Assembly (NCBI RefSeq): GCF_046119375.1
Contig: NW_027362768.1
Coordinates: forward strand, 157,976,001 to 158,040,000
Source of the DNA: Phyllobates terribilis
Taxonomy: Eukaryota
DNA length: 64,000 nucleotides
Reading direction: 5' to 3'
The translations under genes and the position numbers were made by a program. The notes beneath the pieces are model-generated. The model had not been told where the DNA came from, searched no databases, and saw nothing but the letters and a program-made list of their open reading frames with translations. Of this stretch, positions 9,448-55,375 are shown one piece after another; position 1 is the first letter of the stretch; every line of letters starts with the position of its first letter.

Positions 9448-9582
9448 TCACAGTTCTTTTTCATTCTCTTTCTTAATCCCCAGACCGATCAGCACAGAGC
9501 TCTCCAGGGCCAAGTATGTGCCGTACTCTCGGCTTATCTCCTCCTCGAGCTGCTCCTTTGACTTCACCGGTGGAGAGATTTC
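9448..9582 (-). CDS. DNAI3: DNAI3 last coding exon (EISPPVKSKEQLEEEISREYGTYLALESSVLIGLGIKKENEKEL*)
   Basis: tctag| acceptor, TGA at 9450-9448; resembles the WDR63 C-terminus (KSKEQ...YLELEK.VL..LG). Confidence 0.9.
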   Translation of the reverse strand, partial: EISPPVKSKEQLEEEISREYGTYLALESSVLIGLGIKKENEKEL

Positions 9583-27500: not shown

Positions 27501-30500
27501 TAACAGTAATACACAATTTCTAGACCTTTTGTTTGGCTTAAGGCTCATTCAGACTTCGGTGATTTTTCAGCAATGTTCTTGATCAGAGTGATCAGAGTTT
27601 GCTCAGTATAAATATTCACCATCAGAGTTTGCTCAGCGTTTCAGCAGTTCTTCTTGGAGGAGACTCGGATGGAGTCTCCAGCTTCTCTTACCAGACGGCC
27701 GCGGTTGACATCCAGGCGCTGTATGATTTTCTCACTGACCCATAGACTGCCATTGGTATTTTTGATCTGAGAATGGGATCAATATCGGACAAGTCTCCGC
27801 GCTCTTGTGCCGACCACTCAGTCCAAGGAAAAAATATCTAACATGTGAACGACCCCATAGACTTATCATAGGTGAGAGTGGTGTCCGCGAAAAACACAGA
27901 TGAGAAAAACTGACGTCTGAACGAGCCCTTACTTTGTGTCACATTTTCTAACATGTTGCGCCATACCCCTTTGATCTAGGACTTGCATCTTATGCTCTGA
28001 AGCACAAAAGTGTCTAAAGCACATAATGATAGGTGTAAAACATAATGACACATTAAATGATGCAAAAAATGTGCCAAAATTTGATGCCTATTTCACCGAA
28101 TTCTAGACATAAAGACATTAGTGAATCTGCCCCATATTCTTATCACATTATGCCGAGCGTGCAATGCTATTCTATAATCTAAGCCGGCAATTTACAATGC
28201 AAAGTGCTGTAGACGATGTATGGAAGTACTGCCCCCTACTGGCCAGAAGGATAATAATTCTAAAGATACTAAATAGCCTCTATTTCTCACCTTTGAGGCG
28301 GTGTTCTTGGTCACAGCAGTTTTTGCTGACAGCAGCTCGTAGTAAGCGGAGATGTCCCACAGCACAACCTTGGAGGGAAAACACAACGTCAAGATCCTTG
28401 AACATCCGATCTGCCTTTTGTTAAGCGTTATTTCACACTTTTGAGCTCCAGGGACCTTCTGCTCCAAAAACTCCTAAAAAAAAATCAGTGTGAATGTACC
28501 CTAAAGACCCCCATAGATTTTAGACTCACGGCAGCGAATCCTCCGATATCAGCAGGGTCATCCGACATTAGTCTAATTAAAGAAAAACGAGTGGCCGTCA
28601 TTACTTTAAGAAATGAAGGTCAGTCAGTTCGAAAAATTGGGCAAACTTTGAATGTGTCCCCAAGTGCAGTTGCAAAAACCATCAAGCGCTACAAAGAAAC
28701 TGGCTCACATGAGGAAAGCCCCAGGAAAGGAAGACCAAGAGTCACCTCTGCTTCTGAGGATAAGTTTATCCGAGTCACCAGCCTCAGAAATCGCAGGTTA
28801 ACAGCAGCTCAGATTAGAGACAGAAGGGTCCGACATGTCCGATTGTTGCCTCTGAGATAAGCCGCATCCTTAGGACTGACAGTGGCTCTCTCATGGAGGA
28901 GAGTTCAGATGACAGCTATCTATCGTGTACACTGGCCACATACAGAAAAAGTCAGCTGATATAGTGGAATTTAAAAGTTTGGCCGATCAATTATAAACAA
29001 ACGATTATTCACGGTTGTCGACAGGTAACTTCCATTTGCCAAAAGTGTGATCTGTCAGTTTGGGTGCTTTTTAGGCCGTTGTTGGTGACATTAATGATGT
29101 GTATTATGGCACGAGCGTTAATAATTTTTATTTATATAGTGCCAACATATTCCGCAGCACTTTACAATTAAATTAGAACGTTGATCATTTGCTGCTATGA
29201 TACAAGTGATCAGTTTGTTTCGCCTCATGTACAGCAGACCCTTCCCTTTAATAATCCACCTTCTGTAATGTTCCCAGTACCTGACCGTTCATACATCCTC
29301 CAGCGATGATATTGGGGTCACTTGGGCAGAACTGGAAGCAATAAATGTCATCTGGGCATTCGAGCATCAGCTGGAGAGAATAAGAGAAAAAGTCACCATG
29401 AGACGGGATCGCAGCAGAATTCAGGATCCCCAGAAATGAAGTCGGACCTGCGGATGGATGGGGTCATTCAGGCTCCAAATGAGAATCAGCGATGGCGTCA
29501 AGATGAGTTTAGAAGAAGCGTTGACTCGATCCTCCAGCGACAGCCGTTCTGTGAGCGAGACTGCGACCAAACCTGGTGAAGGAATAAGTAGTACAGAACA
29601 TATAATGTATAGTGGATTGCAAAGTGGGCAGACATGTCAGGAGCTGAGCTGCTCCATAGCCAGGCGGTGCCGGCTGTGTAATACGACCGGCACCTGCTGC
29701 TATGGGCGCAGTCACATAAGTCGGACCAAGATCGGAACACAATGCTCGGACTGGCCGGCGGCTCTCCCGGCCCGAATGTGACAGCAGCATAGATATACGG
29801 TGTATGAAGCAGTCACGCTCGGGTCGGGAGAGCCGCCGGCCATTATGTTCCAATCTTGGTCCGATTTATATGGCCATCTGACTGCGCCCCAATAGTAATG
29901 ATGGTAACTTACTGGCGCTGGTTGCGACCATCGCTCACCCATTACCTCCTACCCTGTGTGATAAGGAAATCATTAAATGTGATGTCGCAATGTAACACTG
30001 TTTACTGCCATAACATTACAGTCGTGTACAAATATTATTATTACATTTATTATAATAATCTTTATTCACCTGATGCATCTAAAATGAAAAATAGGAACAT
30101 TTGCAAATAGTCCTATTGTTTTGTGGATACAGCCCCTAAACAAACTTATGTGTCTCTATGGTTACAGACTACAATATAATCCCTGTGTGTAGTCTGATCC
30201 TCTTCCTCTTTTGCTGTCTTCAGCCAAAAAAAGAAAACTGGGGAGAGACGTGATGGAAAAATCATGATTTATTAGTACGCTGCAACCATGGAGACACATA
30301 GATCTGCAGAGAACCTGTAAGCGCAGAACGGTAGGAGATTTAAATCTAATATAACATTAAAGGGTTTTCGCCCCAATGTTAACTTAGATAGAATAGGGGA
30401 TCATTTACTGATCTATGGGGTCTTAACCAATGGGACCCCCAGCCACACCTTAGTATGAACGTGTTCTTCTCCACTCCATATAGGAACTTAAAAACTTGGT

Positions 30501-33500
30501 ACGATCCCTTTAAGTTACTGGAAGTCATGAGAAATCATGGGAGAAAACAATATCAGGAAAGACAGAGGGTCCGGCATTTACCCTGCAGTGTCGGGTGCCA
30601 GCTGATGCAGCTGATGGTTTTTTCTTTGCCTGACTGGTGTTCTGTAAAAGACTGATATTCCTTAAGGTGGGAGTCAGATTTGCCCCCGAAAGTGCTCTCC
30701 TGCTCGCACAATGCTCGCCAGTCGTCCACAAAGGCGTTCACTATCTCATTTTGCTGTAAAGCCAATTCCAGTCTGTGGCAAAGAAACAGAAGGATGCGGA
30801 TGAGGAATAACAAATGAGTACACTGCTACTGTGTATGTGGGCTCTACAGTGGAGGTCTGCAACCTGACAGCTGAATAATGGGAGTTGTAGTTTCACAACA
30901 GATAGAGCGCCGTAGATAGCAGACATCTGACAGGGGTCTGACTACTGGCAACCCTGCGCATCAGCTGATCGGAGGGGCACCAGAATGTTTAGTGACTGTG
31001 CCGGGTATTACAGACTCCTACATATACGGGCTGCAAGACCGGGCACTGCCACTACTAAAGAGATATAGAGGACAGGCGGACCGCCGGAGTGTGATTGGCC
31101 AGATACCGGACCCCCACCAACCTAGTATTCATATCCTAGCCATTGGGTAGGTCATTCATTTTACAAACCCCATGTGACCCCTTTAATCTTGCAGTTTTAC
31201 CTTAATGACACGGAGTTGACGAATTCCTTCAGACTCTTAGATGAGAGATATTCCCACTTCTGCTCTTCGGTGAACTCTCTCGGTGTGTACTGGGTACAGG
31301 CATTTCGAGGGTAAGTCCTAAATCAAATAAATACAGAATTAGGGGATGGGATACGGCCATGGCTGATGGCGCTGAGTTGGTGTGGGTTCTCGCCATGCCC
31401 TCTTGATGGGTATATGTGGTGAGTGCTAGCGTTAAATTACAGCCTAAAACAACCACTCTCAATATTGTCAGTGGAGCGAAGAAGTAGTCTGAGGGTCCCT
31501 GTGACATCCATCGTCCACTGTATAGACATAAAGAGTTAGTCTCATCTCAGTAAGTGATGGCATATCGTTAAGTTACAACCTCTGGGACCCCCATCAATTC
31601 TGTGCATTAAGTGTGTGTCCCTGGCACAACCTAATCTCTACAAACAGAAGTGACTGATGTCTTACCACTTGGTCTGGGTGCTCCGCTCCTGTAGTGACGG
31701 CACCGCTTGTACGCCGGTGTCTCGCTCTTTGGGTTTAACGCTGAACCGTTTGTCCTGGTAAGAGGCGCACTCCATGTACCCGTCCTTTACATCGGACGCA
31801 TTGCAATCGCCGAAAGTGACCCGTGAGCCAAACTCTCTGTGCAGCCGCGAAATCATGAATTTGATCTGTGAAACAAATGGGACGGCTGAATCTTACTAGA
31901 TAGTGGATGCCGTCCTTGTGCCCCAGGCTGGATTCACCGTGGCACTGTCTCGGTGTCAGATGCTTGTACGTTTTTCTTTTTTTTTCTATTGTATATTTTG
32001 TTTTCTCTTAGAAGGGTGTTCCTATCAAAAGAACACATTGTAGTGTGCGAGCTCCACAAAAACTGAGCATGGAGGTCCAACAGCCAGACCCCCAAGGCCA
32101 AGGATGCCCTTTGCTGGGGGGAGAAAAAAGCTGATATTTGGTGCTCCAGCTTTCTTAATATCTCGTGAAGGAGGGGAAGAAGACTTGGCAACTTTTAAAA
32201 ATGACTGAGAATATTGCCTTTTTATGCAGCATTAAAAATGTTTTGCAAATCCATGTGATAGGGAATAATTTCGAGTTCTTCTGAAGAGACCACAGCGATC
32301 CAGAGAACGTTGGTTTAGTATCTCTGTAGCCCCTTCCTGAGGTGCACGTACTCGGTCTCCGCTCCATTTATTATCTATGGGACCAACGGACATAGCCAGC
32401 AGTCCCACAGACAATGAATGGAGCGCAGGCCAAGCATGTGCGCCTCCGCACCCCTCGGGAACGGGTTGCAGAGCGTCATTCTCAGACTTCCAGGATCGCT
32501 GGAAACCCAGTATTCAGAGCCACAGCGATCGGGGATATCTTGATTTTTTGGAGAATAACCTTTTAACTCCAAATATAAATTATTGGTTACTTGTCTAGAA
32601 AAAAAAAAACTTTTTCGTCGTACTTGAGAATATCGGACGTCAGGATGAGCCCTTACTGGAAGCATTTGAGGGATTCGATTTTCCTGTGCAAAGTCGTCCA
32701 CTTTGGCTCAATAATAAATGAGATTCCTGATCTAACTACTTTTATATGAAGTGACATCTTATACCATATATCATCCCATGTAAATCATCTGACCTTGGTC
32801 TGAGATTCCTTCACCATTTCTTCCTCGACCTCCAGCTCGCTGCCTAAAGAGATCCAAGGTCTGGGTACTGGAGAGCTGTACGTGAACTCTTCAGAGTCAT
32901 CGTCTTTCTCTTCTTCATCAGTTACAGCTTCTGGTGGCTACAAATCAATGACAAATAACCTCAGTAATACATGGCTTCTAAGCACCTTATCTCTATTCAG
33001 TGTCCACATCACTGGCGGCTCCTCGGTCATACAGAAGGATGTGGTATCCTCTGCGACACTGGACAGGCCAGGACTGTGCACATTAAACTCGTCCGAATCT
33101 GCTGATCTGGTGGGACCGGACGGCCATCTTATGTGAATGGAGGCCATAGAAAAATGTAATATGCCGGATCCTTTTCTTTCCAAAGTAGATAAGCAGCTGC
33201 CACTAATGTCTGGCAGTGGCTTACTCTGCTCTCCTCACTGAAATGACATGCATGCTCAGCCTAGAAGAGTGTGCATGTGTATGACACAAAGATGGGGGTT
33301 GCAAGAATGAAGCAGCAGCGGGGCTAGGAAAGCGTTCATCCAATTCATCGTTTGTCCGCTCTGTTCAGCTTTATCTAGAAGTGATGAAGTTGGGTATTAA
33401 GTCTAATGGGCCGACTATGTGTCCTCCAGAATAAAGCCAAAGTGGAGTCGACAGGAGATGAGATGGCCGCTTCTGTGGCGCTGCCATTGGCAGACGTACC

Positions 33501-36500
33501 GGGACCACCACCGCCTAGCGGACATATCTGACATATCTGAACCCCGGCTTCTTACCTTCAGGGCTGACTCTTTGGCTTCCTCAGTTACAATGAGATAAAA
33601 GTTCTGACCGTAGGTGAAATCTCTATCGAACACCAGCAGCAGCTCTTCTCCGGGGTACTCCTTTATATTCAGAGAGAAAAAGGTAAATGATTACAAGGCA
33701 GAACATTCACCAGGAGGCTGTAAGAAGACCACGGCCATCGACTGTACCGTAATTATAGACTTAAAGGGGCTGAAGTCAGAAACCGCCGCTCTGCTCTTCA
33801 GATCGCTGAGAATCTCATCTTTCTTTAATAGTCTGAATGGGTTTTCTTGGGTGACGTCCTCATCGATTCGACAGCTGAAGATCTCCTGAGTCTTGGAGGT
33901 TAGAACCAGAGGAACGATATATTCGGGGTGACCTGTGCAGACAGAAAGTTACCCCAATAGGTGCCATCTTGTTCACTTGATCAAATTACCCCCATTCTGA
34001 AACGGGGGTCTTTCTGCTCCCCATCCTTCTTAAAGGATAGATAACAAGTGTCTGATTGCTGGGGGTCCGGCCACTGGAATTCCAACTGATCAAAAGTCTG
34101 GGGGTCCCTATGTCCCCTGTGTAAATAGAGCAGTAGTGAGACCACCGCTATTCTGCACTGCAGCCCCGTCTCCATGGACCTAATGACGGCAGCATCCATT
34201 GAAGTAGCTCCTTAACATCTGAAGACTTATTGTAAAATATCTCTAGGATTTTTTTATTCTCCTATACCAAGGACCCTATTAATAAAAGTGATGGAAAATA
34301 CAAACATCAGGTCCTCTCTTTACAAATCAGGAGGGTTAAATTACATGAGACAACGTGAAAAGGAAGTTTTGAGACGGCTGCAATTAGACATGGCGGTCAC
34401 CAAAATATCAGCCGTATCCTTGTGTCTGTGATTACAGCCGGGATGTTGGTGACTCCCAGCACCGCAGCACTGACGTCACTGGTGAATATAGGACAAAGGG
34501 ACATGGAGAAGGGCACAGCGACACCTGCTGGGGGAATTGTGTACAGCAAAAGGGTAAATATGGCATTGTCACAGGTTAAAGGGGGCACTCATGGGACCTT
34601 ATTACTTTTTAGGGGGTATTCAGGGGTCATTATTACTTTTTAGGGGTGTACTCCGGGGACATTATTACTTTTTAGGGGGTACTCAGAGGACAATATTACT
34701 TTTTAGGGGTGTACTCAGGGGACAATATTACTTTTTAGGGGGGTACTCATTATTATTATAGCGCCATTTATTCCATGGCGCTTTACATGTGAAGAGGGGT
34801 ATACATAATAAAAACAAGTACAATAACCTTGTACAATACAAGTGGGCGACTGGTTCAGGAGGAGCGAGGACTCACAATCTACAAGGGATGGGTGAGGATA
34901 CAGTAGGTGAGGGGAGAGCTGGTCGTGCAGCGGTGGTTACTGCAGGTTGTAGGCTTGTTGGAAGAGGTGGGTCTTCAGGTTCCTTTTGAAGGTTTCCACG
35001 GTAGGCGAGAGTCTGATACGTTGGGGTAGAGAGTTCCAGAGTAGGGGGGATGCACGGGAGAAATCTTGTATACGATTGTGGGAGGAGGAGATAAGAGGGG
35101 AGTAGAGAAGGAGATCTTGTGAGGATCGGAGGCTGCGTGCAGGTATGTAACGGGAGACTAGGTCACAGATATAAGGAGGAGACAGGTTGTGGATGGCTTT
35201 GTATGTCATGGTTAGGGTCTTGAACTGGAGTCTCTGAGCAATGGGGAGCCAGTGAAGGGACTGACAGAGGGGAGAAGCCGGGGAATAGCAGGGGACAGGT
35301 GGATTAGTCGGGCAGCAGAGTTTAGGATAGATTGGAGGGGCAAAAGAGTGTTGGAACGGAGGTCACAGAGCAGGAGGTTGCAGTAGTCGAGGCGGGAGAT
35401 GATGAGGGCGTGCACTAGTGTTTTTGCAGATTCGTGGTTGAGGAATGAGTGGATTCGGGAGATATTTTTGAGTTGGAGTCGGCAGGAGGTGGAAAGGGCT
35501 TGGATATGTGGCTTGAAGGAGAGATCAGAGTCCAGGGTTACCCCGAGGCAGCGAGCTTGCGGGACTGGGGAGAGTGAAGAGCCATTGACTTTGATGGATA
35601 GGTCAGATGAGGGGCTGAGTGAGATGGTGGAAAGATGATGAATTCTGTTTTATCCATATTAAGTTTTAGAAATCTGTCAGAGAAGAAGGATGAGATGGTG
35701 GACAGGCAGTGTGGGATTCTGGTTAGTAGGGAGGAGATATCGGGTCCAGAGAGGTAGATCTGTGTGCCATCAGCATAGAGGTGATACTGAAAGCCATGGG
35801 ACTCTATGAGCTGACCGAGGCCGAAGGTGTAGATGGAAAAGAGCAGAGGTCCTAGAACTGAACCATAGGGGACACCGACAGATAGGGGGCGAGATGAGGA
35901 GGTGGTGTGTGAGTGGCAGACACTGAATGTCCGGTCAGTTAGGTATGAAGAGATCCAAGATAGCGCCAAATCTGTGATGCCGAGAGATGAGAGAGTCTGC
36001 AGTAAGAGGGAATGGTTCACTGTGTCAAAGGCAGATGACAGGTCCAGGGGGAGGAGGATGGAGTAGTGTCGCTTGGATTTGGCGGTCAGTAGGTCGTTGG
36101 TGACTTTAGTCAGGGCAGTTTCAGTGGAGTGGTGCAGTCGGAAGCCAGATTGGAGGCGGTCAAAGAGGGAGCAAGAGGAGAGGTGGGAGGACTGCTCAAG
36201 ATGGATGTGTTGTTCCAGTAGTTTTGAGGCGTAAGGGAGAAGTGATATGGGGCGATAGCTAGCCAGAGAGGATGGGTCAAGGGAAGGCTTTTTGAGGATG
36301 GGAGTGATTGAGGCATGTTTGAAGCATGAGGGGAAGACACCAGTTGTTAGTGAAAGGTTAAAGAGATGGGCTATGGTTAGGGTAAAGACTGTGGTGATGT
36401 TTGGGTTGAGGTGAGACAGGATCATGGGGCATTATTTATTTTTTTTAAGGGGATACTGGGGGTTGCATTAAGACTTTCAGAAAGGCACTTAGGGGGCATT

Positions 36501-39500
36501 ATAACTTACATAAAGGGGCATTAGCACAGTCTAGAGGGTCCTCAGAGGGCATTATTGCCTTAGCACAGTCTAGAGGGTCCTCAGAGGGCATTATTGCCTT
36601 AGCACAGTCTAGAGGGTCCTCAGAGGGCATTAATGCCTTAGCACAGTCTAGAGGGTCCTCAGAGGGCATTATTGCCTTAGCACAGTCTAGAGGGTCCTCA
36701 GGGGGCATTATTGCCTTAGCACAGTCTAGAGGGTCCTCAGGGGGCATTATTGCCTTAGCACAGTCTAGAGGGTCCTCAGAGGGCATTATTGCCTTAGCAC
36801 AGTCTAGAGGGTCCTCAGGGGGCATTATTGCCTTAGCACAGTCTAGAGGGTCCTCAGAGGGCATTATTGCCTTAGCACAGTCTAGAGGGTCCTCAGGGGG
36901 CATTATTGCCTTAGCACAGTCTAGAGGGTCCTCAGAGGGCATTATTGCCTTAGCACAGTCTAGAGGGTCCTCAGGGGGCATTATTGCCTTAGCACAGTCT
37001 AGAGGGTCCTCAGAGGGCATTATTGCCTGCTAACTTGCACACAGGGGACATTATTATTGACTAAGTTGCTCTAATGAGGTATCAATACATTGCAGGTAAA
37101 AATATTACAATTTAAGTGGGCACATAGGGGGCTTTATAACATGCAAAGAGGCACACAGGGGGCACCAGTGCTGTCAAGGAAGCACTCAGGGGCAATATTA
37201 TTTTTTAAAGGGACACTAAATGGACATTATCACTTTTGGAGGGGTCATTTAGGCATTATTATTTCTAGGTCCCTCGTCCTCCGTGCACCCTGGTATCTGT
37301 ATACAGAGAGCGGCAAACGGCTCATCTGCAATGTGTTGGCGGTCGGTGTGGGGTCATGGATGAATGAAGTCATTTTTGCAGACCCCTCTGGTCCCCCCCG
37401 CACATGATATGTGTGATACGATGTTACATTGCTTTCTCGTTTGATCCCGCCGGCTCGGGGCAATGTGGAACAATGAGAAGGTTCATCTCGCTGCCGGCGT
37501 CTGTGCGCCGCACAAAAATCCCTATTTTTTTCTAGATGGGAATTCTGTCTGATGTGGGGTTTTAACCTGAGAATGACTTCTAAGAAATAAGATCTGAATG
37601 CACACGCCGCCACGTCGGACAATCCTTTGAGATTGGGGACTACAAAGACATGTCTCCCTTAGGGTTTGTTCACACCTACCGTTTTTTTTTGTCAATTAAT
37701 TATTTTGTGAGGACCAAATGCAACATTGTAGAGTAACAGCAAAATGAGTGACATTTCAAGAATCTAATTCACACGGTGCATTTTTTTCCTTCCGTTTTTT
37801 GCACCTGCGGTGCTCTTTTTTTCTTTTTTTTTAATGCAGGATGTCAATTTTTCAGCCTTTTTAATGCAGTTTTTTTTTGTGTGTGTTTTATTCCCCTTGA
37901 GATCAAAATGGCTTGGCACCAAAAAAATGCACCAAAAACTTGCGTAATCTCTGCTGTGGTTTTCTGCCCATCGGCTGCCTTTTTCATACAGAAAAAAAAT
38001 GTTGTTTTTTTTTCAGGTACCACATAAAAACCTATAGGAAAAAAAAACGCACCAAAAGCAGTGTTTACGCTAGGTGTGAACACAGCCTTATAGCGACACA
38101 CTCAATTCTTCTTAAAGGATACATTGGAAAATCCTCCAGGTCTATGTCTCCGATACAGCGTGACGTGACCCTTGCACAGCTGTGCTGTGAACCCTGTTCT
38201 TTTACAGTAAGCACACCAGCCTCACCAGGTCTACAAGATGTATTTATTAGTGTGTACGGTTTGTATTGTGATAGATCTACTTCAATTATCACCATGTAAG
38301 CCAGGAAGGATATGGATATTGTTTTTTGGGGGTCAAAGGAGATCTCCGTAACAATATGAACCTGACCAAAATGATAGGGAGGCACAATGTCTTCAGCCTC
38401 AGGCTTTGAGGTTGTAGTTTCAGCACAGGAGACAGATAGTTTTCACAATTTTACTGCCCATTAAAGGGCTTTTTTCATGTCTCATTTAAAGTAAGGTTGT
38501 AAAAGATTAGAAAAACGAGGCCTCTTTCTTTACAAAACAGCGCCACTCATGTCCATAGGTTGTGTATGGTATTGCTGATCTGCCTCCTTCACTCCACTTG
38601 AGCTGCTATACCAGTCACAACCTATAAACAGGTGTGGCGCTGTTCCTGGAAGAAAGCATTTTTATAATTCTGCACAAGTTTTTTTTATTTATGGGGAATG
38701 CATTTAGTTACTAAAACACATATTAGGAAAGCAGACAGGCCCTCTTTGGCTTTGGTCAATGACTTCAGTAGGTGACCAATACACTGGGCTATCCCTCTCC
38801 TAATGTCCCAGCCATTTCTCAGAGGTGACTTACCTGACCGGGTGGAAGCCTCCGAGTCCTCGCGCTTTTTAGCTAAAGGTAATAATGAAAATAACCAATC
38901 AGATGATCCGAAAAATGATACTGAGACCTGAGGGAGTCAAATGGTTAATGATCATACCAGTACATGATGGGAGTAGTAGTCCCCAATCATGCAACAAACA
39001 TGCAGCCGTACAAGCAGGTATAACACCAAATATTAAGAATCTATGGTATGACTTAGAATATGTAACTTGTGCCCATAGCTCTGCAATTACTCCTCATCCT
39101 CTCCCCTATATGCAGTGCAGGCTCACGTTATGTGGCTAGTCATCGCCACCATGTGGTCAGACAATGTGCAGCATGGAATCACTCCTGTTAGGACTCATTC
39201 ACACAGTACTAGTCCTATCTCTGTTTTTTTCCTCGAATCGATCTCATTGTTGACATGTCCATGTATTTTTGCGGATTGATTGGTCGGCATCAAAAACATG
39301 GAGAACTGTCCGATTTTGATCAAACTCGTCTATGGCCCCGATTCATCACGCCCGGTCTTGATGAGGGAACATGTTGGGGTCAGACGCTCCTGATTTATTA
39401 AGTGGCGCGAGCTTCTTAATGGATCAGGAGCGTCTTTAAAAGTAGTGTGCACCTATGTGTGCTGCCCACCACAGATCTTACTCCAGTCCAGTGACTGGAG

Positions 39501-42146
39501 TAAGATTTGTGATGTAACCATGGATTTGATGAGCCGGTGTCGCCATGCCCTGTCCCAACTCTGCCCATTTTGGCGTAGCTGGCCAAATCTGTCGTGAAAA
39601 TGGCAAAAGTCGCAAAATTTTTCAGTAACCACAAGTTTTGCAATTTTTCAAAGTATTTTAAGATTTACGGAGTAAACACTTTTAATGAATCGGGGTCTGT
39701 AAAAAATTGGACAACATTCAGATTTTATCGGTGTCTTGTCCGTTTTTCCCTGTTTGATAGGAAAATCTTAAGAAACCGCCATTAGTGGGGTTTATTTATA
39801 TAAGAAAAACTGATGAAACTCTGATGGTAAAAACTGACGCTGATAAAAAAAATCGGATCCAAAACACATAAAAAAGGTCAATTTTTCGCATGCGAGAAAA
39901 AACACTGAAGTCTGAATGAGGCCAAGATGAGCAGCCGAGTAAAAAACACTTCACGGGCATTTTAATTTCTGAACAATCTGATATATCTAACACCGACATC
40001 TTGAAGAAGAGTCACCTGAGAGTTTTGCTTTCCTCTTTGCGCTCCCCTTCCTCTTGCCTCTACGAGACGATGACCTGGAACCTGCAGACGGAGATCGGGA
40101 TGAATCCCTGGTGGACATATCTGCAAAACATGAAGCAATCCGTGAGATACGTGAAACGCAAATATACACGCCGCAACGCGGAAACTGCAACACCAAGAAG
40201 AAAAAGTGGTGGAACGATGGAAATCGCAGGATAGAGACATGATCTGCAAATGAGGAAAATGGAAAGAAAATGTTCAAAACAGCTCGATTTATTCAGTCTG
40301 CGAGCTTAAAGACGATTCTTTGAGCCAATTTTCACGTGGATTTCACCCTTTGCAATGCATAATGTGAAATCTGCAACAAAATCTGCATAGATTTTTCCCA
40401 GTCACATTTGAACTTATCAAATAAGGGTTTGTTCACACAGACATTTTTTTTCGCAGGGAATTTTCTGGCTGAAAAAGTCTAAAAAAAAACCTGCTTCTAA
40501 GATCCATGTTGATTTTGATGCATTTTTTTCTCAGCCTGTTTTTTATGATGTATTTTAATTATAATATGGGGTGTAATGATAAGGCGCGATTTAGACGTCC
40601 GGATATTTCAGGTACTGGAAAAAACAGTACCGGAGATATCCATGTCCGTGTGCAACTGTGTGACAACCGTGTGCCATATCAGGATCACATGTACCGGCGC
40701 CTGGGAATCAGTGTACAGTTAGCGCTGTTCCCAAGCGCCGGGTGCTGAACGCTGCCCTCATCATTGTCCCCTGCTGGTGCTGCCATCAGCACAAGCAAGG
40801 GACAATGTTGAGAGTAGTATTCTGCTTCCGCTGTGTCCTGGTGTAAAAATAAGAATGAAATAAAAAAATCCTTATACTCAACTGTCTGAAGAGGTCGTCC
40901 GCTGTAATTCATCTGACTGCTCATGCCAAGGAGTCAGTGAGAAAGACTCGTTGCAGCGAGCGAGCCCCAGAGTTGCGCTCAGTGAGTGACAGGACACCGC
41001 TCACTGCAGTGAGTCATTCTCCCCGTCTACTCGGCATGAGCGGTCAGATGGGTTACAGCAGGGGACTTCTTCGGACAGGATTTTTTTATTTTATTCCTTG
41101 TTTTACACCAGGACACAGCGGGAGCAGAATACTACTCTCATCATTGTTCTTTGCTAGCGCTGATCACAGCGCCAGCAGGGGACAATGATGAGGGCAGCTC
41201 ACTGCATGGAAAACATGGAATAAAAACTGCAGCAAAAATGTGCGTTGTCTGTGATTCCGCCAAAGAGCTGATATGATGCTTTATTAACAACACGTTAAAA
41301 AAAAAATAGGACTTGTGAGCTATAGATGCAATGTCTCCATTATTGCAAGAGGATTTGAAGCATTTTTAGGTGGATTTTTAACAGAATCTGCATAAGAAAA
41401 CTCCATGAAAACATTCCCTTTAACGTGACATACAGGTCACCCAGGACTATGACTGCCTTGTGACAGCTGTGATGGCAGCCATGCTGTCTCTTCTTTCACA
41501 AAAAATAGAAATAACTAGGAAACCACTGAAATTAATTTGTTGTTGGATTTAAAGGGATTGTCCAGTATATAATAGTATGTATAAAAATGGCAGGGATTGT
41601 AATGAAGCAATAAAATAACTAATAAGCATCCCCTTTAAGCCACTGATGTTCCAGCATGGCCGCCACTCCAAAGTCAGTCTATATTGGGATGCACCCCATT
41701 GCAAATAAGACTTGTATGCCCACATACCAGCTTTTTTTTGTATATTTCCATAATTTAGAATATTCAACATAAATCCATACCTATAGATATAGATTCACTG
41801 CGGCTCCAAGTGATAAGCAGCGTAGTCTCATGTTATGTGTAAGGCTGTGTTCACACACAGTGTAGTCTCTCTCACGTTATGTCTAATTCACGTGATATCG
41901 CCACCATGTGGCCAGACTGGGTACTGCATGGAGCTTTCCTGTTACTCAAAGAGCATAAATGAGTAGAAACCTTCATGTGACTTCTGCACAATCTAGCACA
42001 TAGATGCATGACTTTAATATCGAGATCTTATGAGAAGAGTCACCTGAGCGTTTCGCTTTCCGCTCTGCGCTCCCCTTCTTCTTGCTTTTAAGAGAGGACG
42101 ACCTGGAACCTCCAGATGGAGATCGGGATGAATCTCTATCGGACAT
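9448..42146 (-). CDS. DNAI3: Dynein axonemal intermediate chain 3 (WDR63), whole multi-exon coding span; 22 canonical coding exons (896 aa) plus a duplicated ATG exon (931 aa if both are included)
   Basis: Hand-spliced exons with GT-AG borders and matching phases give an open frame resembling vertebrate WDR63 as recalled (GHPEYIVPLVLTSKTQEIF, LMLECPDDIYCFQFCPSDPNIIAGGCMNGQ, SRPGVFFIGKEDGNVDIWDLLEKTHEP). It lies head-to-head with MCOLN3. Confidence 0.95.
9714..9836 (-). CDS. DNAI3: DNAI3 coding exon 21 (STAVLHYLDREVSHLEYYEQRK...HSKKS)
   Basis: 123 nt, ctgcag| ... |gtaagt. Confidence 0.92.
9905..11670. repeat. Three tandem copies of a ~590-bp unit in DNAI3 intron 20
   Basis: atgcaagctgccaatgccacc recurs at ~9914, ~10497 and ~11089. 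Confidence 0.92.
12098..12189 (-). CDS. DNAI3: DNAI3 coding exon 20 (AKQHFLAVADDSGTLHVLQIPWTLHHPSANE)
   Basis: 92 nt, ttgcag| ... |gttggt. Confidence 0.92.
12678..12882 (-). CDS. DNAI3: DNAI3 coding exon 19 (SGPILQSCCTQKRYT...DIWDLLEKTHEP...CIKPWIMS)
   Basis: 205 nt, tcgcag| ... |gtaaca. Confidence 0.94.
13717..13847 (-). CDS. DNAI3: DNAI3 coding exon 18 (SAKPSQRHGIHDGLVHTVQRS...WNFAIWKEGVT)
   Basis: 131 nt, ttgcag| ... |gtgagt. Confidence 0.93.
14110..14173 (-). CDS. DNAI3: DNAI3 coding exon 17 (DGELLYTDWKMEKDGDTGRHI)
   Basis: 64 nt, ctacag| ... |gtgagt. Confidence 0.93.
14856..15113. mobile_element. Penelope-like element remnant: ~105-bp inverted repeat enclosing a hammerhead-like core
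   Basis: Arms 14856-14960 / 15009-15113; CTGATGA-A-GGAGTT(tgttc)AACTCT-GAAA at 14986-15014; GAAACGCGTT on the minus-strand arm. Confidence 0.55.
15142..15560. mobile_element. Degraded Tc1-like remnant (right boundary approximate)
   Basis: TA followed by CACTGTGTTCCAAATTATTATGCA, resembling a Tc1 terminal repeat; recognition only. Confidence 0.35.
15698..15828 (-). CDS. DNAI3: DNAI3 coding exon 16 (DKLQTPIKEEK...VNTSYFAGTE)
   Basis: 131 nt, tgtag| ... |gtgagt. Confidence 0.9.
17170..17990. repeat. Degenerate ~26-29-bp minisatellite (tatatttggcactgtatggtggcattat)
   Basis: Direct reading. Confidence 0.9.
18208..18295 (-). CDS. DNAI3: DNAI3 coding exon 15 (TSIPKIETGGEFSPIKISLRDEHHHCRTA)
   Basis: 88 nt, tttaag| ... 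|gtaaga. Confidence 0.88.
19629..19832. mobile_element. Harbinger-type MITE
   Basis: ~36-bp imperfect TIRs (..ccc(g/a)ctatcagtatttggtcagtattt), TAA TSD. Confidence 0.75.
20548..20695 (-). CDS. DNAI3: DNAI3 coding exon 14 (SVMFWDIRSHK...FKHLDLIWRPLLK)
   Basis: 148 nt, ctacag| ... |gtgcag. Confidence 0.92.
22525..22598 (-). CDS. DNAI3: DNAI3 coding exon 13 (ITRTGYPYENKSGYCVQLATCSPD)
   Basis: 74 nt, tttcag| ... |gtatgt. Confidence 0.9.
22727..24620. repeat. 97-bp tandem satellite (~19-20 units; some 86-bp variants)
   Basis: actgatcctgt-actgatcctgagttacatcctgtattatactccagagctgcactcactattctgctggtgcagtcactgtgtacatacattacatt; period measured 23761 to 23858. Confidence 0.95.
24935..25057 (-). CDS. 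DNAI3: DNAI3 coding exon 12 (TPLEVKQSHDSPLVRYCAVSSIEHGHREVITDLHWLPDYFE)
   Basis: 123 nt, ctacag| ... |gtgagt. Confidence 0.92.
25080..27515. repeat. 30-bp minisatellite (gtaatacaccaggcggtaataatattacca), ~80 units with higher-order blocks
   Basis: Direct reading; 27-bp variants recur with ~530-bp and ~840-bp periods. Confidence 0.95.
27541..27928. mobile_element. Harbinger-type MITE
   Basis: TIRs ggctc(a/g)ttcagac, TTA TSD. Confidence 0.7.
28291..28368 (-). CDS. DNAI3: DNAI3 coding exon 11 (VVLWDISAYYELLSAKTAVTKNTASK)
   Basis: 78 nt, ccaag| ... |gtgaga. Confidence 0.9.
28573..28821 (+). mobile_element. Internal fragment of the same DD38E transposase (N-terminal HTH region) embedded in a MITE-like sequence
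   Basis: KEKRVAVITLRNEGQSVRKIGQTLNVSPSAVAKTIKRYKETGSHE...AAQIRD; no TIR or TSD. Confidence 0.85.
29118..29168 (-). mobile_element. Short L2/L2-SINE-type 3'-end fragment (duplicated at ~4004-4060)
   Basis: gtaaagtgctgcggaatatgttggcactatataaata(a/taa)n on the minus strand. Confidence 0.6.
29281..29370 (-). CDS. DNAI3: DNAI3 coding exon 10 (LMLECPDDIYCFQFCPSDPNIIAGGCMNGQ)
   Basis: 90 nt, ctccag| ... |gtactg. Confidence 0.94.
29448..29572 (-). CDS. DNAI3: DNAI3 coding exon 9 (LVAVSLTERLSLEDRVNASSKLILTPSLILIWSLNDPIHPQ)
   Basis: 125 nt, accag| ... |gtccga. Confidence 0.92.
30582..30772 (-). CDS. DNAI3: DNAI3 coding exon 8 (LELALQQNEIVNAFVDDW...SWHPTLQG)
   Basis: 191 nt, cacag| ... |gtaaat. Confidence 0.93.
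31201..31317 (-). CDS. DNAI3: DNAI3 coding exon 7 (TYPRNACTQYTPREFTEE...VNSVSLR)
   Basis: 117 nt, phase 2-2, tttag| ... |gtaaaa. Confidence 0.92.
31666..31865 (-). CDS. DNAI3: DNAI3 coding exon 6 (IKFMISRLHREFGS...STQTKW)
   Basis: 200 nt, cacag| ... |gtaag. Confidence 0.93.
32794..32937 (-). CDS. DNAI3: DNAI3 coding exon 5 (PPEAVTDEEE...PRPWISLGSELEVEEEMVKESQTK)
   Basis: 144 nt, tgtag| ... |gtcaga. Confidence 0.92.
33556..33660 (-). CDS. DNAI3: DNAI3 coding exon 4 (EYPGEELLLVFDRDFTYGQNFYLIVTEEAKESALK)
   Basis: 105 nt, ag| ... |gtaaga. Confidence 0.93.
33748..33932 (-). CDS. DNAI3: DNAI3 coding exon 3 (GHPEYIVPLVLTSKTQEIFSCRIDED...SPFKSIIT)
   Basis: 185 nt, cacag| ... |gtacag, strong WDR63 similarity. 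Confidence 0.93.
34600..34748. repeat. ~32-bp minisatellite (ttactttttagggg.gtactcaggggaca.ta), interrupted by the L2 insertion
   Basis: 4-5 units; a similar motif resumes after 36425. Confidence 0.8.
34749..36425 (-). mobile_element. 5'-truncated L2-clade LINE (RT domain plus 3' end), inactive
   Basis: YRPISLLP, QSGFR..HSTETAL, LDLSSAFDTVNH, GVP(Y)GSVLGPLLF, YAD(G); 3' stem-loop agcgccat-ggaataa-atggcgct and (TAA)n tail at the left end; inserted into a minisatellite. Confidence 0.9.
36518..37028. repeat. 39-bp tandem repeat, ~13 units
   Basis: gcattattgccttagcacagtctagagggtcctcag(a/g)gg. Confidence 0.93.
37662..38087. mobile_element. Harbinger-type MITE
   Basis: TIRs gg(g/c)t(t/g)tgttcacaccta, TTA TSD. 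Confidence 0.75.
38834..38872 (-). CDS. DNAI3: DNAI3 coding exon 2 (39 nt, (A)KKREDSEASTRS)
   Basis: ctttag|CT...CAG|gtaagt; phase 1-1; bridges to the GHP exon. Confidence 0.8.
40016..40120 (-). CDS. DNAI3: DNAI3 start exon copy 1b (ATG at 40118): MSTRDSSRSPSAGSRSSSRRGKRKGSAKRKAKLS
   Basis: ttgcag|ATATG...TCAG|gtgact; 105 nt; ends in phase 1, fitting the next exon; basic N-terminus as in WDR63. Confidence 0.8.
40750..41190. mobile_element. Palindromic MITE-like segment between the two DNAI3 start exons
   Basis: ~120-bp inverted arms (gctgccctcatcattgtcccctgctgg... / ...ccagcaggggacaatgatgagggcagc); related sequence at ~730-840 and ~21737-21845. Confidence 0.6.
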
Positions 42147-42148
42147 GT
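42044..42148 (-). CDS. DNAI3: DNAI3 start exon copy 1a (ATG at 42146): MSDRDSSRSPSGGSRSSSLKSKKKGSAERKAKRS
   Basis: tcacag|ACATG...TCAG|gtgact; 105 nt; ends in phase 1; paralogous to 40016-40120. Confidence 0.7.
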
Positions 42149-42873
42149 CTGTGAAACAAGAAGCAGTTTGTGAGACAGGTGAAATGCAAACATATGACAC
42201 TGGCATGGCGGCACGAGATTATGGATCCATACAGCACTGCAGCACTGGGGTCCTGGGCTCAAATCCCACCAAGGACAACATCTGCAAGGAGTTTGTATGT
42301 TCTCCTCGTGTCTGCTGGGTTTCCTCCTGGTTCTCCGATTCCTTCCACACTCCAAAGACATCCTGATAGAGATAAGTAGCAATAGGGCACTTCTGCACTG
42401 CGCCATTTACTGCTTATCAAAATTTTCAGCTGTTCTTTAGATATTAACACTTTATTTTGTTTATTTTTTATAATCTCGTAGCCTTGGAGACCGACCACCG
42501 CTGCTAGACAGCAGATCAGACGCAGTGCTTACAAGCTCTTTTCTATTGAGCTTGTAGGCACAGTTTTGAAACCAGGCCAGGATCGCTGCAGTGCGCTCTT
42601 ACCTCCCGACCAGTTTTAGAACAGAGCTTACTAAACAGCATTTCTTTTCATGAATTTCCAGGAGGAATAACAGAGGAATGGCACAATACAGAATTTTAAG
42701 TAAAGATGATGCAGAATTGTTATTACATGGGGAATACATGTATTTACGAAATAAAAGATGGTGACAGATGATGTTTGTTACAGCAGCCTTAGTCTGTGGG
42801 GTCACAATGTACGTCCACATGCTGTCAGTCCATTAGGTGAATGATGGCACCTTCCACCATCATATACATACTA

Positions 42874-45800: not shown

Positions 45801-46277
45801 AATAGATGTCATTACATTTATAAATTTTTTATATTCTCAGTTTTTTTCTCAGAAAAATCAAAGAAACTAATTTTTTTAAAAAAATGCCTGTTCCGTTTTT
45901 TTGTTGACAAACTGTACATATAGACCCCCTCACACACGGCGTCTCCCCGGGGAGCACGGCCTTTGTATGTACTTACACAGGTAGCGGGAGATGAGAACGG
46001 ACCCCAGGCCACAGCGATCCTTCCCCCGTAACCCAACTCTCCCTGTCCAGTCCCGGAGCATAAGGGGGGCGGAGCAAAGTGGAGAAGGCGGCCTGAGCGA
46101 TACTGTCCCTGCTTCCTCCGATTGGATGACTCCGTGCAGGAGGTGGGATTGGATTGAGAGTATTTTTTTTTCTTCTCAACTCCTCAACTCCTCAAGCACC
46201 AGGCAACATTTTCTAGGCGCCAGACAACATTTTCTAGGCGCCACTGGCGACCAGGCGCCTGGGTTTGTCGAGCCCTG
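42874..46277 (-). mobile_element. Full-length hAT DNA transposon (3404 bp) with a ZNF862-like transposase
   Basis: 14-bp TIRs CAGGG(G/C)TCGACAAA (13/14), perfect 8-bp TSD ACATACTA (42866-42873 / 46278-46285), subterminal repeats. Confidence 0.93.
43057..45218 (-). pseudogene. hAT transposase (TTF-type zinc finger, DUF4371-like region, RNase H-like core, hATC dimerisation domain) with a single 1-nt frameshift at ~44854
   Basis: RRFRQEW..W...CEIC...LETFKK[H]AKSLQH; SLMLDGSTD; IHCVAHRLNL; LPVSTSCCERGFSLMNMVKNKFRSRM. Restoring one base joins the 141-aa and 589-aa ORFs into ~720 aa. Confidence 0.9.
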
Positions 46278-49235: not shown

Positions 49236-50511
49236 CAGGTGCATCTCACTAAGTTAGAATATCATCAAAAAGTTCATTTATTTCAGCAGTGCCACATCCT
49301 GATCGCCTCCATGCCACATTGCCGCATTGATACAGGAATTGATGCAAAAGGAGCCCGACCAAGTATTGAGGGCATTTACTGAACATACATTTCAGTAGGA
49401 CAACTTTTCAGATTTTAATAACATTTTTCAAGCTGTTATAAAGTATTCTAATTTACTGAGATAATGACTTTTGTGTTTTCATTGGCTGTAAGTCATAATC
49501 ATCAACATTAAGGCTGAGTTCACACGATGCGTTTTTCATGCGTTTCCGCGGCGTTTTTGCAGTTGCGTAAACGCAGCGGAAACGCATGAAAAACGCATGG
49601 TAGAAGGGCAGCAATGTTCCCCAATTGAAATCCGCATGTGCTGTGCCCATGATGCGGATTTTTCCGCAGCGTAAACGCTGCGGTCAAAAATCTGCAGCAT
49701 GTCAATTAATTTTGCGGAAACGCTGCTCTTTTGCCGCCATTGACTTGCATTAGACCGCATGGAATCCGCATCACTGTATATGTTGAAGCGCTTTTCATAC
49801 GGTCTAATGTGCGGATGGTACCCGGGTGTGGATGAGAGGACTCTCATCCAGACCCAGGTACCATTAAAAAAAAAAGAATAAAATAAAAAATATATATATT
49901 CTCACCTTCTGACGGCCCGCGCTGCGTCCTGCTGGCTTCCCGCGCACTTCGCGGTTGAATGAAGGACCTTCGCTGACGTCAGAGTCATGTGACCGGGTCA
50001 CGTGACGCTGACGTCGGAAGGTCCTAAAGTCTTCACTGCCGGCAGCCGGGACCGATGAAGCAGGACACCGGGGGCCATCAGAGGGTAAAGTATATATTTA
50101 TTTTTTATTTTTTGACATTCACACACTATATAAATCCATGCCGGTTGCATGGATTTATATAGTGTGAAGTTGACAAGCACTTTCCAAGTGATGCTAAAAT
50201 CGCTTGGGAAGCGCTTGTCAACCCGCATGCGGAAATGAAAGTGAAGACCGCTTCATTTCCGCATGTCCCTGGCAGGAAACCGCATGTACAATCCGCATGC
50301 GTTTTTTCCTGCCAGAGAGACGCAGAAACGCTCAGGAAAAAATCCTGAGCATTTCTGCATCGTGTGCACATACCCTAACAGAAATAAACACTTGGAATAG
50401 ATCACTCTGTTTGTAATGACTCTATATAATATAGGAGTTTCACTTTTTTGTATTGAAGAACTGAAATAAATTAACTATTTGATGATATTCTAATTTAGTG
50501 AGATGCAGCTG
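49236..50511 (+). mobile_element. Internally deleted Tc1 element hosting a nested MITE
   Basis: TA TSD, ~39-bp TIRs CAG(G/C)TGCATCTCACTAA..TAGAATATCATCAAA; transposase C-terminal remnant (..LIASMP..ID...DAKGA(R)P...) at ~49290-49370. Confidence 0.8.
49512..50375. mobile_element. PIF/Harbinger-type MITE nested in the Tc1 remnant
   Basis: TIRs GG(C/G)T..GT(T/G)CACACGATGC, 3-bp TSD TAA on both sides. Confidence 0.75.
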
Positions 50512-52116: not shown

Positions 52117-52250
52117 CTTTCCTGGATCCAGCGCTGAGCGCTGCGTCCACAGTCTTCTGTCGTCAGATCCCTCAACTCCTCTGTGAATGACACTTTCCCA
52201 GGCCTTATAGCTCGGCTCAGGTGGTGGGACACCACCTGAGTATTCAGGAA
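52117..52250 (-). other. Candidate non-coding first exon of DNAI3 (upper boundary approximate)
   Basis: Consensus AAG|GTGAGT donor on the minus strand in a locally GC-rich patch; both ATG exons have acceptors and so need an upstream exon; unproven. Confidence 0.3.
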
Positions 52251-52332
52251 ATAGGACACCACGCTGCTACTCTGTTTCATGTTACATTGCTATTCTGATA
52301 CATTGAACTGAGTTGTTGACTCAACTCAACAG

Positions 52333-54619: not shown

Positions 54620-55375
54620 AACAGCAAGGGGCCCAGGATGGGCAAAATTATAACAGGAAGAGACCCAGGATGGGGGACATTATACCAGGAAGGGACCCAG
54701 GATGGGGGACATTATACCAGGAAGGGACCTAGGATGGGGGACATTATATCAGGAAGGGACCCAGGATGGGGGACATTATATCAGGAAGGTACCAAGGATG
54801 GGGGATATTACACCAGGAAGGGACCAAGGATGGGGGATATTACACCAGGAAGGGACCAAGGATGAGGGACATTATATCAGGAAGGTGCCCAGGATGGGGG
54901 ATATTATACCAGGAAGGTGCCCAGGATGGGGGAAATTATAACAGGAAGGGGCCCAGTATGGGAGAAATTATAACAGGAAGGGACCCAGGATGGGGGACAT
55001 TATACCAGAAAGGGGCCCAAGATGGGTGACATTATACCAGGAAAGGACCCAGGATGGAGAACATTATATCAGGAAGGGGCCCAGAATGAGGGATATTATA
55101 ACAGGAAGGGGCCTTGGATGGGGAACATTATACCAAGAATGGGAGCAGGATTAGGGATAATACACCGGTATGGGAGTCATTATACCAGGAAGGGGCCCAG
55201 GATAGGGGGCATTATACCAGGTTCAGGGGCACTATATCCTAAGAAAGGACCCAGGATGGGGGATAAAAGGACATTATTACAGGAGGGGGCCAGGATCGCA
55301 GAAATTATTACAGGAAGGGGCCAGAATCAGGGACATTATTACAGAAAGGGGCCAGGATGGGGACATTATAACACA
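54620..55375. repeat. 33-bp G-rich minisatellite, ~22 decaying units
   Basis: gggacattataccaggaagggacccaggatggg. Confidence 0.9.

What the first reader, a model, noticed from the sequence alone, without database searches (positions are those of the whole stretch)
40016..42148. Tandemly duplicated ATG exon of DNAI3: both copies intact and in frame with each other
Seen: two 105-nt exons, each with an AG acceptor, an ATG at +3 and the same TCAG|gtgact phase-1 donor. They differ at 17/105 nt (26/34 aa identical) with no indels, while their homologous intron flanks (39120-39200 vs 41870-41950) have indels and MITE insertions. Splicing 1a to 1b is in frame (G|AT ATG = Asp-Met), giving a doubled Ser/Arg/Lys-rich N-terminus (931 aa). 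Using either copy alone gives 896 aa. Known: mammalian WDR63 has one short basic start exon (recalled). Inference: both copies are maintained by selection, as alternative starts or as a phospho-rich repeat on an inner-arm dynein intermediate chain.
Basis: partly seen in the sequence, partly recalled or inferred. Interest (0 to 1): 0.7.

Follow-up and report, generated by a model that had tools for sequence, protein, structure and literature searches.

The report
Duplicated DNAI3 start exon, spliced in series
In the golden poison frog, the start-codon exon of the ciliary dynein gene DNAI3 has been duplicated in tandem, and the mRNA carries both copies one after the other, so the protein gains 35 residues in its floppy N-terminal tail; RefSeq already models this, so it is real but modest.

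Summary
Two 105-nt exons lie on the minus strand at 42148-42044 and 40120-40016. They differ at 17 nt, 26 of 34 residues are identical, and both have the same AG acceptor and TCAG|GTGACT donor.

The gene is DNAI3 (WDR63/IC140). The window matches Phyllobates terribilis, because its CDS span of 32,699 bp equals that of the RefSeq gene.

Spliced contigs in four runs of one study join copy A to copy B to the next exon at canonical GT..AG sites, with no mismatch. Both RefSeq isoforms (931 and 966 aa) also carry both copies. The copies are therefore used in series. No evidence shows them used as alternative starts.

The doubling is also present in Ranitomeya imitator, R. variabilis and Dendrobates tinctorius. 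In D. tinctorius the second copy has lost its ATG. Fifteen other frog species have a single copy. Two Australian myobatrachoid frogs carry a doubling that appears to be independent.

The doubled stretch is Ser/Arg/Lys-rich and predicted to be disordered. Evidence that selection acts on the peptide itself is weak: dN/dS is 0.39 and not significant. A break in the reading frame of copy B would truncate DNAI3, and that alone can explain why the frame is kept.

This is a new example of a known kind of event, already annotated in RefSeq, and I found no paper describing it.

The parts
42044..42148 (-). Copy A of the duplicated exon (105 nt). It carries the annotated start codon at 42146-42144 and encodes MSDRDSS...KAKRS plus one nt.
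   Evidence: Sequence. RNA contigs lie on 42044-42150 with 0 mismatches in 4 runs. It equals residues 1-34 of RefSeq P0294. The CDS span 42146..9448 is 32,699 bp, the same as the gene range of P0296.
40016..40120 (-). Copy B of the duplicated exon (105 nt, phase 1-1). It is used as an internal coding exon and encodes D-MSTRDSS...KAKLS.
   Evidence: The same contigs run on directly from 42044 to 40120 and from 40016 to 38872. It equals residues 35-69 of P0294.
40121..42043 (-). The 1923-nt intron between copies A and B (GT..AG). It holds a MITE-like inverted repeat at 40751-41198.
   Evidence: Joint 40120>42044 'skips 1923', with ends CT..AC on the + strand, in all 4 runs. Inverted repeat I1.
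38873..40015 (-). The 1143-nt intron between copy B and the next exon (GT..AG). Compared with copy A's unit it contains inserted repeats.
   Evidence: Joint 38872>40016 'skips 1143' in all 4 runs. Distal flank homology 39142-39190 vs 41897-41944.
38834..38872 (-). The next coding exon (39 nt, phase 1-1), encoding AKKREDSEASTRS.
   Evidence: Joined to copy B in the contigs. Matches residues 70-82 of P0294.
42149..42194 (-). Duplicated upstream intron flank of copy A, including the polypyrimidine tract and acceptor. Its homologue is 40121-40166.
   Evidence: BLAST alignment 42194-42015 vs 40166-39988, 81.7 % identity.
49906..50010 (-). Candidate non-coding 5' exon, NOT verified. It is a CpG-rich stretch ending ...CAGAAG|GTGAGA, with two TGACGTCA palindromes. 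There is an in-frame TGA at 49981, and the uATG at 49988 is out of frame.
   Evidence: CpG o/e about 1.0 at 49801-50200. Sequence. Frame check. The X4 contig needs at least 103 nt of a 5' exon ending in AG that does not lie in 42151-42870. A peptide test against the D. tinctorius X1 N-terminus did not single this place out.
33559..33945 (-). First exon(s) of the folded DNAI3 N-domain (HPEYIVPLVLTSKTQEIF...), downstream of the duplicated tail.
   Evidence: tblastn of frog DNAI3 proteins. The AF2 model is ordered from about residue 85.

Best explanation
A segment of about 2 kb holding the ATG-bearing internal exon of DNAI3 was duplicated in tandem on the stem lineage of dendrobatine poison frogs. 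DNAI3 encodes the IC140 intermediate chain of inner-arm dynein f/I1. The duplicated exon is 105 nt long, is phase 1-1, and has its own acceptor and donor.

Because the exon length is a multiple of three and each copy has both splice sites, the spliceosome includes both copies in series: 5' exon > copy A > copy B > 39-nt exon. Translation starts at copy A's ATG. Copy B's ATG becomes an internal Met.

The protein gains a second 35-residue Ser/Arg/Lys-rich unit (net charge about +8 to +10 per unit). This unit sits in a disordered tail ahead of the folded DNAI3 N-domain.

Shown: the anatomy, the serial splicing, and that the duplication is shared among four dendrobatid species.

Inferred: why it persists. 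Copy B stays open mainly because a frame break there would truncate the whole of DNAI3. The peptide itself is under weak constraint. It is a tolerated lengthening of a basic, low-complexity tail, which may add valency for binding acidic partners or add phosphorylation sites.
For: 1. Transcripts. In each of 4 runs, one contig (depth 12-54, 295-1237 nt) lies with 0 mismatches on 42044-42150, then 40016-40120, then 38872 onward. The joints fall exactly at GT..AG. The longest exact run shared by the two copies is 17 nt, so an assembly with 31-letter words cannot have joined them by mistake. Most of the intron (41220-41779) has no coverage at all.
2. Annotation. Both RefSeq P. terribilis isoforms, X2 (931 aa) and X1 (966 aa), start with A+B+exon 2, letter for letter as in the window. 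The CDS span matches exactly.
3. Relatives. R. imitator, R. variabilis and D. tinctorius proteins are also doubled. All 8 dendrobatid copies share a 4-residue deletion that is absent from 15 single-copy frogs. They form one clade (96/91), within which the A copies (96/89) and the B copies (80/63) each form a clade.
4. Copy B's ATG is Val in D. tinctorius.
5. In the AF2 model, residues 1-81 have pLDDT 42-48 and no secondary structure. Homology to mammalian DNAI3 in solved axonemes starts only at residue 57.
6. Among dendrobatids, copy B is 77-86 % identical, similar to the neighbouring disordered exon (69-92 %). Copy A is 88-100 % and the rest of the protein 92-97 %. Ranitomeya has an in-frame 3-residue deletion in copy B.
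Against: - The transcript evidence comes from contigs of one study. The runs are labelled 'RNA?' as a guess.
- Contigs drop rare variants, and 16 joints were not displayed. Minor isoforms that skip A or B cannot be excluded.
- The RefSeq models of the relatives are predictions, and I could not see their DNA.
- dN/dS between A and B is 0.39, below 1 but not significant (p = 0.12). Some constraint on the peptide is possible.
- The same exon doubled independently in myobatrachoids, which hints that the doubling may be more than neutral.
- The 5' exon and the transcription start were not located with certainty.
Confidence: 0.8

Rival explanations
1. The two copies are alternative or mutually exclusive start exons. 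Some transcripts use A alone and others B alone, giving two 896-aa proteins with different N-termini.
For: Both copies keep an ATG and both splice sites in P. terribilis and Ranitomeya. Tandem exon duplicates often become mutually exclusive (general knowledge; see the titles listed). An older ab initio model for R. imitator (P0299) starts at copy B's Met.
Against: Every contig that covers the region carries both copies in series. Every RefSeq isoform in 4 dendrobatid species carries both. Copy B's ATG is lost in D. tinctorius and in both myobatrachoid doublings. Including both copies does not break the frame, so nothing forces exclusivity.
Confidence: 0.08
2. The doubled tail is itself selected. 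A second basic, serine-rich unit changes how the IC140 tail works in dynein f/I1, for example in docking, tubulin-tail binding or phospho-regulation. The duplication was fixed and is kept for that reason.
For: The same exon was doubled independently in Myobatrachoidea (Mixophyes, Pseudophryne). The AU test rejects a shared origin of the A copies, p = 0.031. Composition and net charge are kept in every copy. dN/dS is 0.39. There is no frame-shifting indel in 105 nt, although the flanks have several.
Against: dN/dS is not significantly below 1. Copy B evolves as fast as the neighbouring disordered exon and tolerates a 3-residue deletion and the loss of its Met. The tail is predicted to be disordered and has no counterpart in mammalian DNAI3 before residue 57. 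Frame maintenance is explained by the downstream protein. Short symmetric exons in repeat-rich introns may simply duplicate often. The tree rests on 37 columns.
Confidence: 0.22
3. One copy is a dead pseudo-exon, or the duplication is an assembly artefact.
For: Intactness in this genome alone is not beyond chance (15-24 %).
Against: Spliced contigs contain both copies. The copies are 16 % diverged with different flanking repeats. Orthologous doubled proteins exist in three other species from independent assemblies.
Confidence: 0.02

Closest known systems
RefSeq model XP_073499668.1 / XP_073499665.1, 'dynein axonemal intermediate chain 3-like' isoforms X2 and X1 of Phyllobates terribilis (P0294, P0296)
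   Same: Same locus. The N-terminus is identical to copy A + copy B + exon 2 of the window, and the CDS span of 32,699 bp is the same.
   Different: The database entry is only a predicted protein. Nothing in it says that residues 1-34 and 36-69 are a tandem exon duplicate, when the duplication arose, or that other frogs have one copy.
Single-copy frog DNAI3 (e.g. Bufo bufo P0159, Engystomops P0156, Hyla sarda P0303, Xenopus tropicalis P0164, Aquarana P0002)
   Same: Same gene and the same exon layout. An ATG exon encodes MS.RDSSRSPSR...KRKAK.S, followed by the AKK.EDS exon and then HP[DE]YI.PLVLTSKTQEIF.
   Different: There is one copy of the ATG exon, 38 residues long. The dendrobatid copies are 34 residues, share a 4-residue deletion, and are present twice.
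Myobatrachoid DNAI3 (Mixophyes fleayi P0163, Pseudophryne corroboree P0165/P0301)
   Same: The same exon is also present twice and in frame. The second copy is used internally.
   Different: The indels differ and the dendrobatid 4-residue deletion is absent. These copies group apart from the dendrobatid ones. The second copy has no Met. This appears to be an independent event.
Mutually exclusive exon pairs derived from tandem exon duplication (the class treated in PMC8373072 and bioRxiv 10.1101/133215)
   Same: Origin by tandem duplication of an internal exon, giving adjacent homologous exons of equal length and phase.
   Different: Here both exons are included together. The result is an internal repeat, not a substitution.
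Chlamydomonas IC140 / human DNAI3 in solved axonemes (8glv_AG, 8j07_k1, 9fqr_Hw)
   Same: Orthologous intermediate chain of inner-arm dynein f/I1. The WD region and the N-domain align.
   Different: Mammalian proteins start about where copy B's basic tail ends (query residue 57 aligns to residue 7-10). They have no counterpart of the Ser-rich units.

Membership tests
DNAI3 / WDR63 / IC140 orthologue | Sequence homology to DNAI3 chains of solved axonemes, stronger than to other dynein intermediate chains | tested here: met
   The exon at 12670-12984(-) hits 8j07_k1 DNAI3 at E 6.5e-32, against 1e-9 for the outer-arm ICs. The N-domain of P0294 hits 9fqr_Hw and 8j07_k1 at E 1e-44.
DNAI3 / WDR63 / IC140 orthologue | C-terminal WD40 beta-propeller and the DNAI3_N domain (PF27785) | tested here: met
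   WD40 PF00400 scores 36.6 bits, above its cutoff of 27. PF27785 is precomputed for P0296 and all frog orthologues. The local Pfam copy lacks PF27785.
DNAI3 / WDR63 / IC140 orthologue | Subunit of inner-arm dynein f/I1 in the axoneme | not testable with these tools
   Inferred from orthology only.
Tandem exon duplication with both copies included (internal repeat expansion) | Two adjacent homologous exons of equal length and phase, with homologous intron flanks | tested here: met
   105 nt each and 83.8 % identical. Flanks are 79-82 % identical over 75 + 49 bp.
Tandem exon duplication with both copies included (internal repeat expansion) | Both copies present in one mature mRNA with the frame preserved | tested here: met
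   Contigs in 4 runs join A>B>exon 2 at GT..AG. RefSeq 931-aa and 966-aa proteins.
Mutually exclusive / alternative first coding exons | Transcripts carry one copy or the other, not both | tested here: not met
   Only the A+B form was seen in contigs and annotated isoforms. Minor forms cannot be excluded from contigs.
Mutually exclusive / alternative first coding exons | Start codon kept in each alternative exon across species | tested here: not met
   Copy B begins with Val in D. tinctorius, Lys in Mixophyes and Ala in Pseudophryne.

The most novel reading that the evidence does not exclude
The same small exon of DNAI3 was duplicated and fixed twice independently, in poison frogs and in Australian myobatrachoid frogs. 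In this reading, that happened because a longer basic, serine-rich tail on the IC140 intermediate chain is advantageous. It might tune docking or phospho-regulation of inner-arm dynein f in sperm or epidermal cilia. The event would then be convergent protein evolution by exon duplication, not a tolerated accident.
Probability: 0.15. Interest if true: 0.55.

Novelty: new member of a known kind. Interest (0 to 1): 0.3.

Why it matters
This is a clean, datable natural example of how a symmetric internal exon, once duplicated, is included twice at once and lengthens a disordered protein tail. Here the protein is a deeply conserved axonemal dynein subunit. It also shows that two intact 'ATG exons' need not be alternative starts, which is useful for annotation. 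The apparent second, independent doubling in another frog clade makes DNAI3's N-terminal tail a small test case for asking whether such expansions are neutral or selected. It does not change what is known about dynein f, and the isoform is already in RefSeq.

Tried and rejected
Two look-ups of shorter isoforms found no record. As a result I could not do codon-level dN/dS on orthologues, check splice sites in relatives, or search for relic second copies in single-copy frogs.
- A word search with the first 300 residues of the R. imitator protein, meant to catch transcript-derived partial proteins of other dendrobatids, found none.
- Locating the 5' exon by peptide similarity to the upstream-ATG isoforms of D. 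tinctorius and Hyla sarda failed. Ungapped and gapped scans gave only chance-level scores. The CpG-rich candidate at 49906 stays unverified. No RFX X-box motif was found upstream.
- The global alignment of the upstream flanks misbehaved, so I used the BLAST alignment instead.
- The paper search found nothing that links DNAI3/WDR63 with exon duplication or dendrobatids.
The annotated proteins P0294 and P0296 served instead. One script read the frame across the candidate exon-1/copy-A junction, and only locally.


Full report
**Observation.** Two 105-nt segments lie on the minus strand at 42148-42044 (copy A) and 40120-40016 (copy B). Each is preceded by a pyrimidine tract and AG, has ATG at positions 3-5, and ends TCAG|GTGACT. 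They differ at 17 nt with no indel. The 34 codons from the ATG give 26 identical residues.

BLAST between the two units aligns 42194-42015 with 40166-39988 (180 bp, 81.7 %, one gap). It also aligns 41944-41897 with 39190-39142 (49 bp, 79.6 %). The duplicated unit therefore included intron on both sides. A MITE-like inverted repeat (arms 40751-40872 and 41077-41198) and other insertions have since accumulated.

Copy A leaves phase 1. Copy B is 105 nt (phase 1-1) and the next exon, 38872-38834, is 39 nt (phase 1-1). Serial splicing is therefore in frame, with Asp-Met at the junction.

**Gene and genome.** An exon at 12670-12984(-) matches human DNAI3 in the solved axoneme 8j07 (E 6.5e-32) far better than it matches any other dynein intermediate chain. 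A library search with that exon returned a full-length frog DNAI3 (P0002). tblastn of P0002 maps about 20 exons from 33945 down to about 9450.

A word search with P0002 gave the DNAI3 proteins of some 20 amphibians. Cluster look-up then gave Phyllobates terribilis 'DNAI3-like' isoforms X2 (931 aa, P0294) and X1 (966 aa, P0296). The N-terminus of both equals copy A + copy B + exon 2 of the window, letter for letter.

The recorded gene range of P0296 is 32,699 bp. The distance from copy A's ATG (42146) to the stop codon at 9450-9448 is also 32,699 bp. The window is therefore this locus of the golden poison frog.

**How the copies are used.** The run search found four runs of one study that hold parts of 38700-42300. 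When laid on 38700-42870, each run has one contig (295, 366, 368 and 1237 nt; depth 54, 47, 22 and 12). Each contig lies with no mismatch on 42044-42150, continues directly on 40016-40120, and then continues at 38872. The joints 'skip 1923' and 'skip 1143', and both have CT..AC ends on the plus strand, which is GT..AG on the gene's strand.

Most of the intervening intron has zero coverage, so these are spliced RNA assemblies even though the runs are labelled only 'RNA?'. The longest exact match between A and B is 17 nt, shorter than the 31-letter words used for assembly, so the join is not an assembly artefact.

The contigs run 17-103 nt beyond 42150 into sequence that does not lie in 42151-42870. 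Copy A's acceptor is therefore really used, and a 5' exon lies further upstream.

No joint that skips A or B was listed. However, 16 joints were not shown and contigs drop rare forms, so minor isoforms are not excluded. Both RefSeq isoforms carry both copies. They differ only by a 35-residue extension of an exon at 28473-28291.

**Start codon.** A CpG-rich stretch at about 49.8-50.1 kb ends ...CAGAAG|GTGAGA at 49906. If this is the 5' exon, there is an in-frame TGA 26 codons upstream of copy A's ATG, and the only nearby upstream ATG is out of frame. That agrees with the RefSeq start. This exon is a candidate only. Peptide comparison with the longer D. tinctorius X1 N-terminus did not pick it out above chance.

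**Comparative evidence.** The doubled N-terminus is present in:
- Ranitomeya imitator (931 aa)
- R. variabilis (931 aa)
- Dendrobates tinctorius (934 and 951 aa)

One copy is present in 15 other frogs: Ascaphus, Xenopus, Rhinophrynus, Spea, Pelodytes, Rana, Aquarana, Mantella, Hyperolius, Gastrophryne, Hyla, Bufo, Engystomops, Rhinoderma and Eleutherodactylus.

All eight dendrobatid copies share a 4-residue deletion and the motif SPS[GA]GSRSSS, both absent from the single-copy species. In a maximum-likelihood tree of the exon peptides (37 columns, so read with caution) they form one clade (96/91). Inside it are an A clade (96/89) and a B clade (80/63). This points to one duplication before Phyllobates, Ranitomeya and Dendrobates split.

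Copy B begins Asp-Val in D. tinctorius, so its ATG is dispensable. Ranitomeya has an in-frame 3-residue deletion in B.

Mixophyes fleayi and Pseudophryne corroboree also have a doubled exon, but with different indels and no Met in the second copy. These copies group away from the dendrobatid ones. An AU test rejects a tree that unites the A copies of both lineages (p = 0.031). The same exon therefore seems to have been doubled twice. I could not obtain genomic DNA of any relative, so this rests on annotated proteins.

**Constraint.**
- Between A and B, dN = 0.13 and dS = 0.33, giving omega 0.39. With 16 coding differences this is not significant (p = 0.12).
- Random substitution at the observed divergence leaves the frame, AG and GT intact in 15-24 % of trials. 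Intactness in one genome proves little.
- Among the four dendrobatids, copy A is 88-100 % identical, copy B 77-86 %, the neighbouring 13-residue exon 69-92 %, and the rest of the protein 92-97 %.
- Copy B thus behaves like ordinary disordered sequence.
- Once both exons are spliced in constitutively, a stop or frameshift in B would truncate all of DNAI3. That alone explains why B stays open.

**The protein.**
- Each unit is about one third Ser and one third Lys+Arg, with a net charge of +8 to +10.
- An AlphaFold2 model of residues 1-240, built with 29 orthologues, gives pLDDT 42-48 and no secondary structure for residues 1-81. The ordered domain starts at about residue 85.
- Homology to mammalian DNAI3 in solved axonemes begins at residue 57, in the basic end of copy B. 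Mammals have no counterpart of the Ser-rich part.
- DNAI3 is the IC140 chain of inner-arm dynein f, part of the intermediate-chain/light-chain tower (PMC10886578).
- What the extra unit does is not known. My reading is that it is a tolerated lengthening of a basic tail. The rival reading is that more basic or phosphorylatable valency is selected. Its main support is the parallel event in myobatrachoids.

**Comparison with what is known, and verdict.** Tandem exon duplication is a well-known process. Often the copies become mutually exclusive (papers listed). Here both are included, giving an internal repeat. The isoform is already in RefSeq for this species and its relatives. I found no paper that describes the duplication.

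The alternative-start option is not supported, and selection on the repeat itself is unproven. I score it as a new member of a known kind, of modest interest.

No hand-joined spliced model was sent to any search. The annotated proteins were used instead.

Noticed in passing
window 1-4870 (exon-like matches at 4454-4167, 2581-2495, 1597-1520, minus strand): A second, partial copy of middle DNAI3 exons (equivalent to residues about 397-559) lies downstream of the gene's stop. RefSeq also lists a separate 369-aa 'DNAI3-like' protein (P0295) on the same chromosome. It is 94-100 % identical to the gene's 3' exons, which fits a partial tandem duplicate running on beyond the window.
   Followed up: partly
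window 42874-46277 (603-aa ORF at 43060-44868, minus strand): A large hAT-type transposon with a long open frame lies just upstream of copy A. If the candidate 5' exon at 49906 is right, the transposon lies inside DNAI3 intron 1.
   Followed up: no
window 42200-42340: A short, SINE-like repeat directly upstream of the duplicated flank has summed contig depth of about 35,000-55,000 in the four runs. It belongs to a very abundantly transcribed repeat family, and it marks the upstream limit of detectable homology between the two units.
   Followed up: no
window 36401-37106: A 39-bp tandem repeat array of about 17 units, 97-98 % identical in its core, lies inside a DNAI3 intron. This region has a strong GC skew.
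   Followed up: no
window 28291-28473 (minus strand): RefSeq isoforms X1 (966 aa) and X2 (931 aa) differ by 35 residues here. X1 reads a 61-residue stretch where X2 uses a shorter exon. The 35-residue difference has nothing to do with the duplicated exon, although it happens to equal its size.
   Followed up: partly
proteins P0163, P0165, P0301 (Mixophyes fleayi, Pseudophryne corroboree): The same DNAI3 exon is doubled in two myobatrachoid frogs, apparently independently. The two Pseudophryne isoforms differ by one Ala at the start of the second copy, which looks like a NAGNAG acceptor.
   Followed up: partly
proteins P0300 (D. tinctorius X1), P0302/P0158 (Hyla sarda X1/X2): In these species an upstream ATG in the 5' exon is in frame and adds 9-17 residues ahead of the usual Met. 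In P. terribilis the corresponding candidate upstream ATG (49988) is out of frame.
   Followed up: partly
paper PMC10886578, Table 1: The review lists DNAI3 as 'WDR78' and DNAI4 as 'WDR63'. PDB entry 9fqr names the DNAI3 homologue 'WD repeat domain 63', and the frog records use WDR63 for DNAI3. The aliases appear to be swapped in that table.
   Followed up: no
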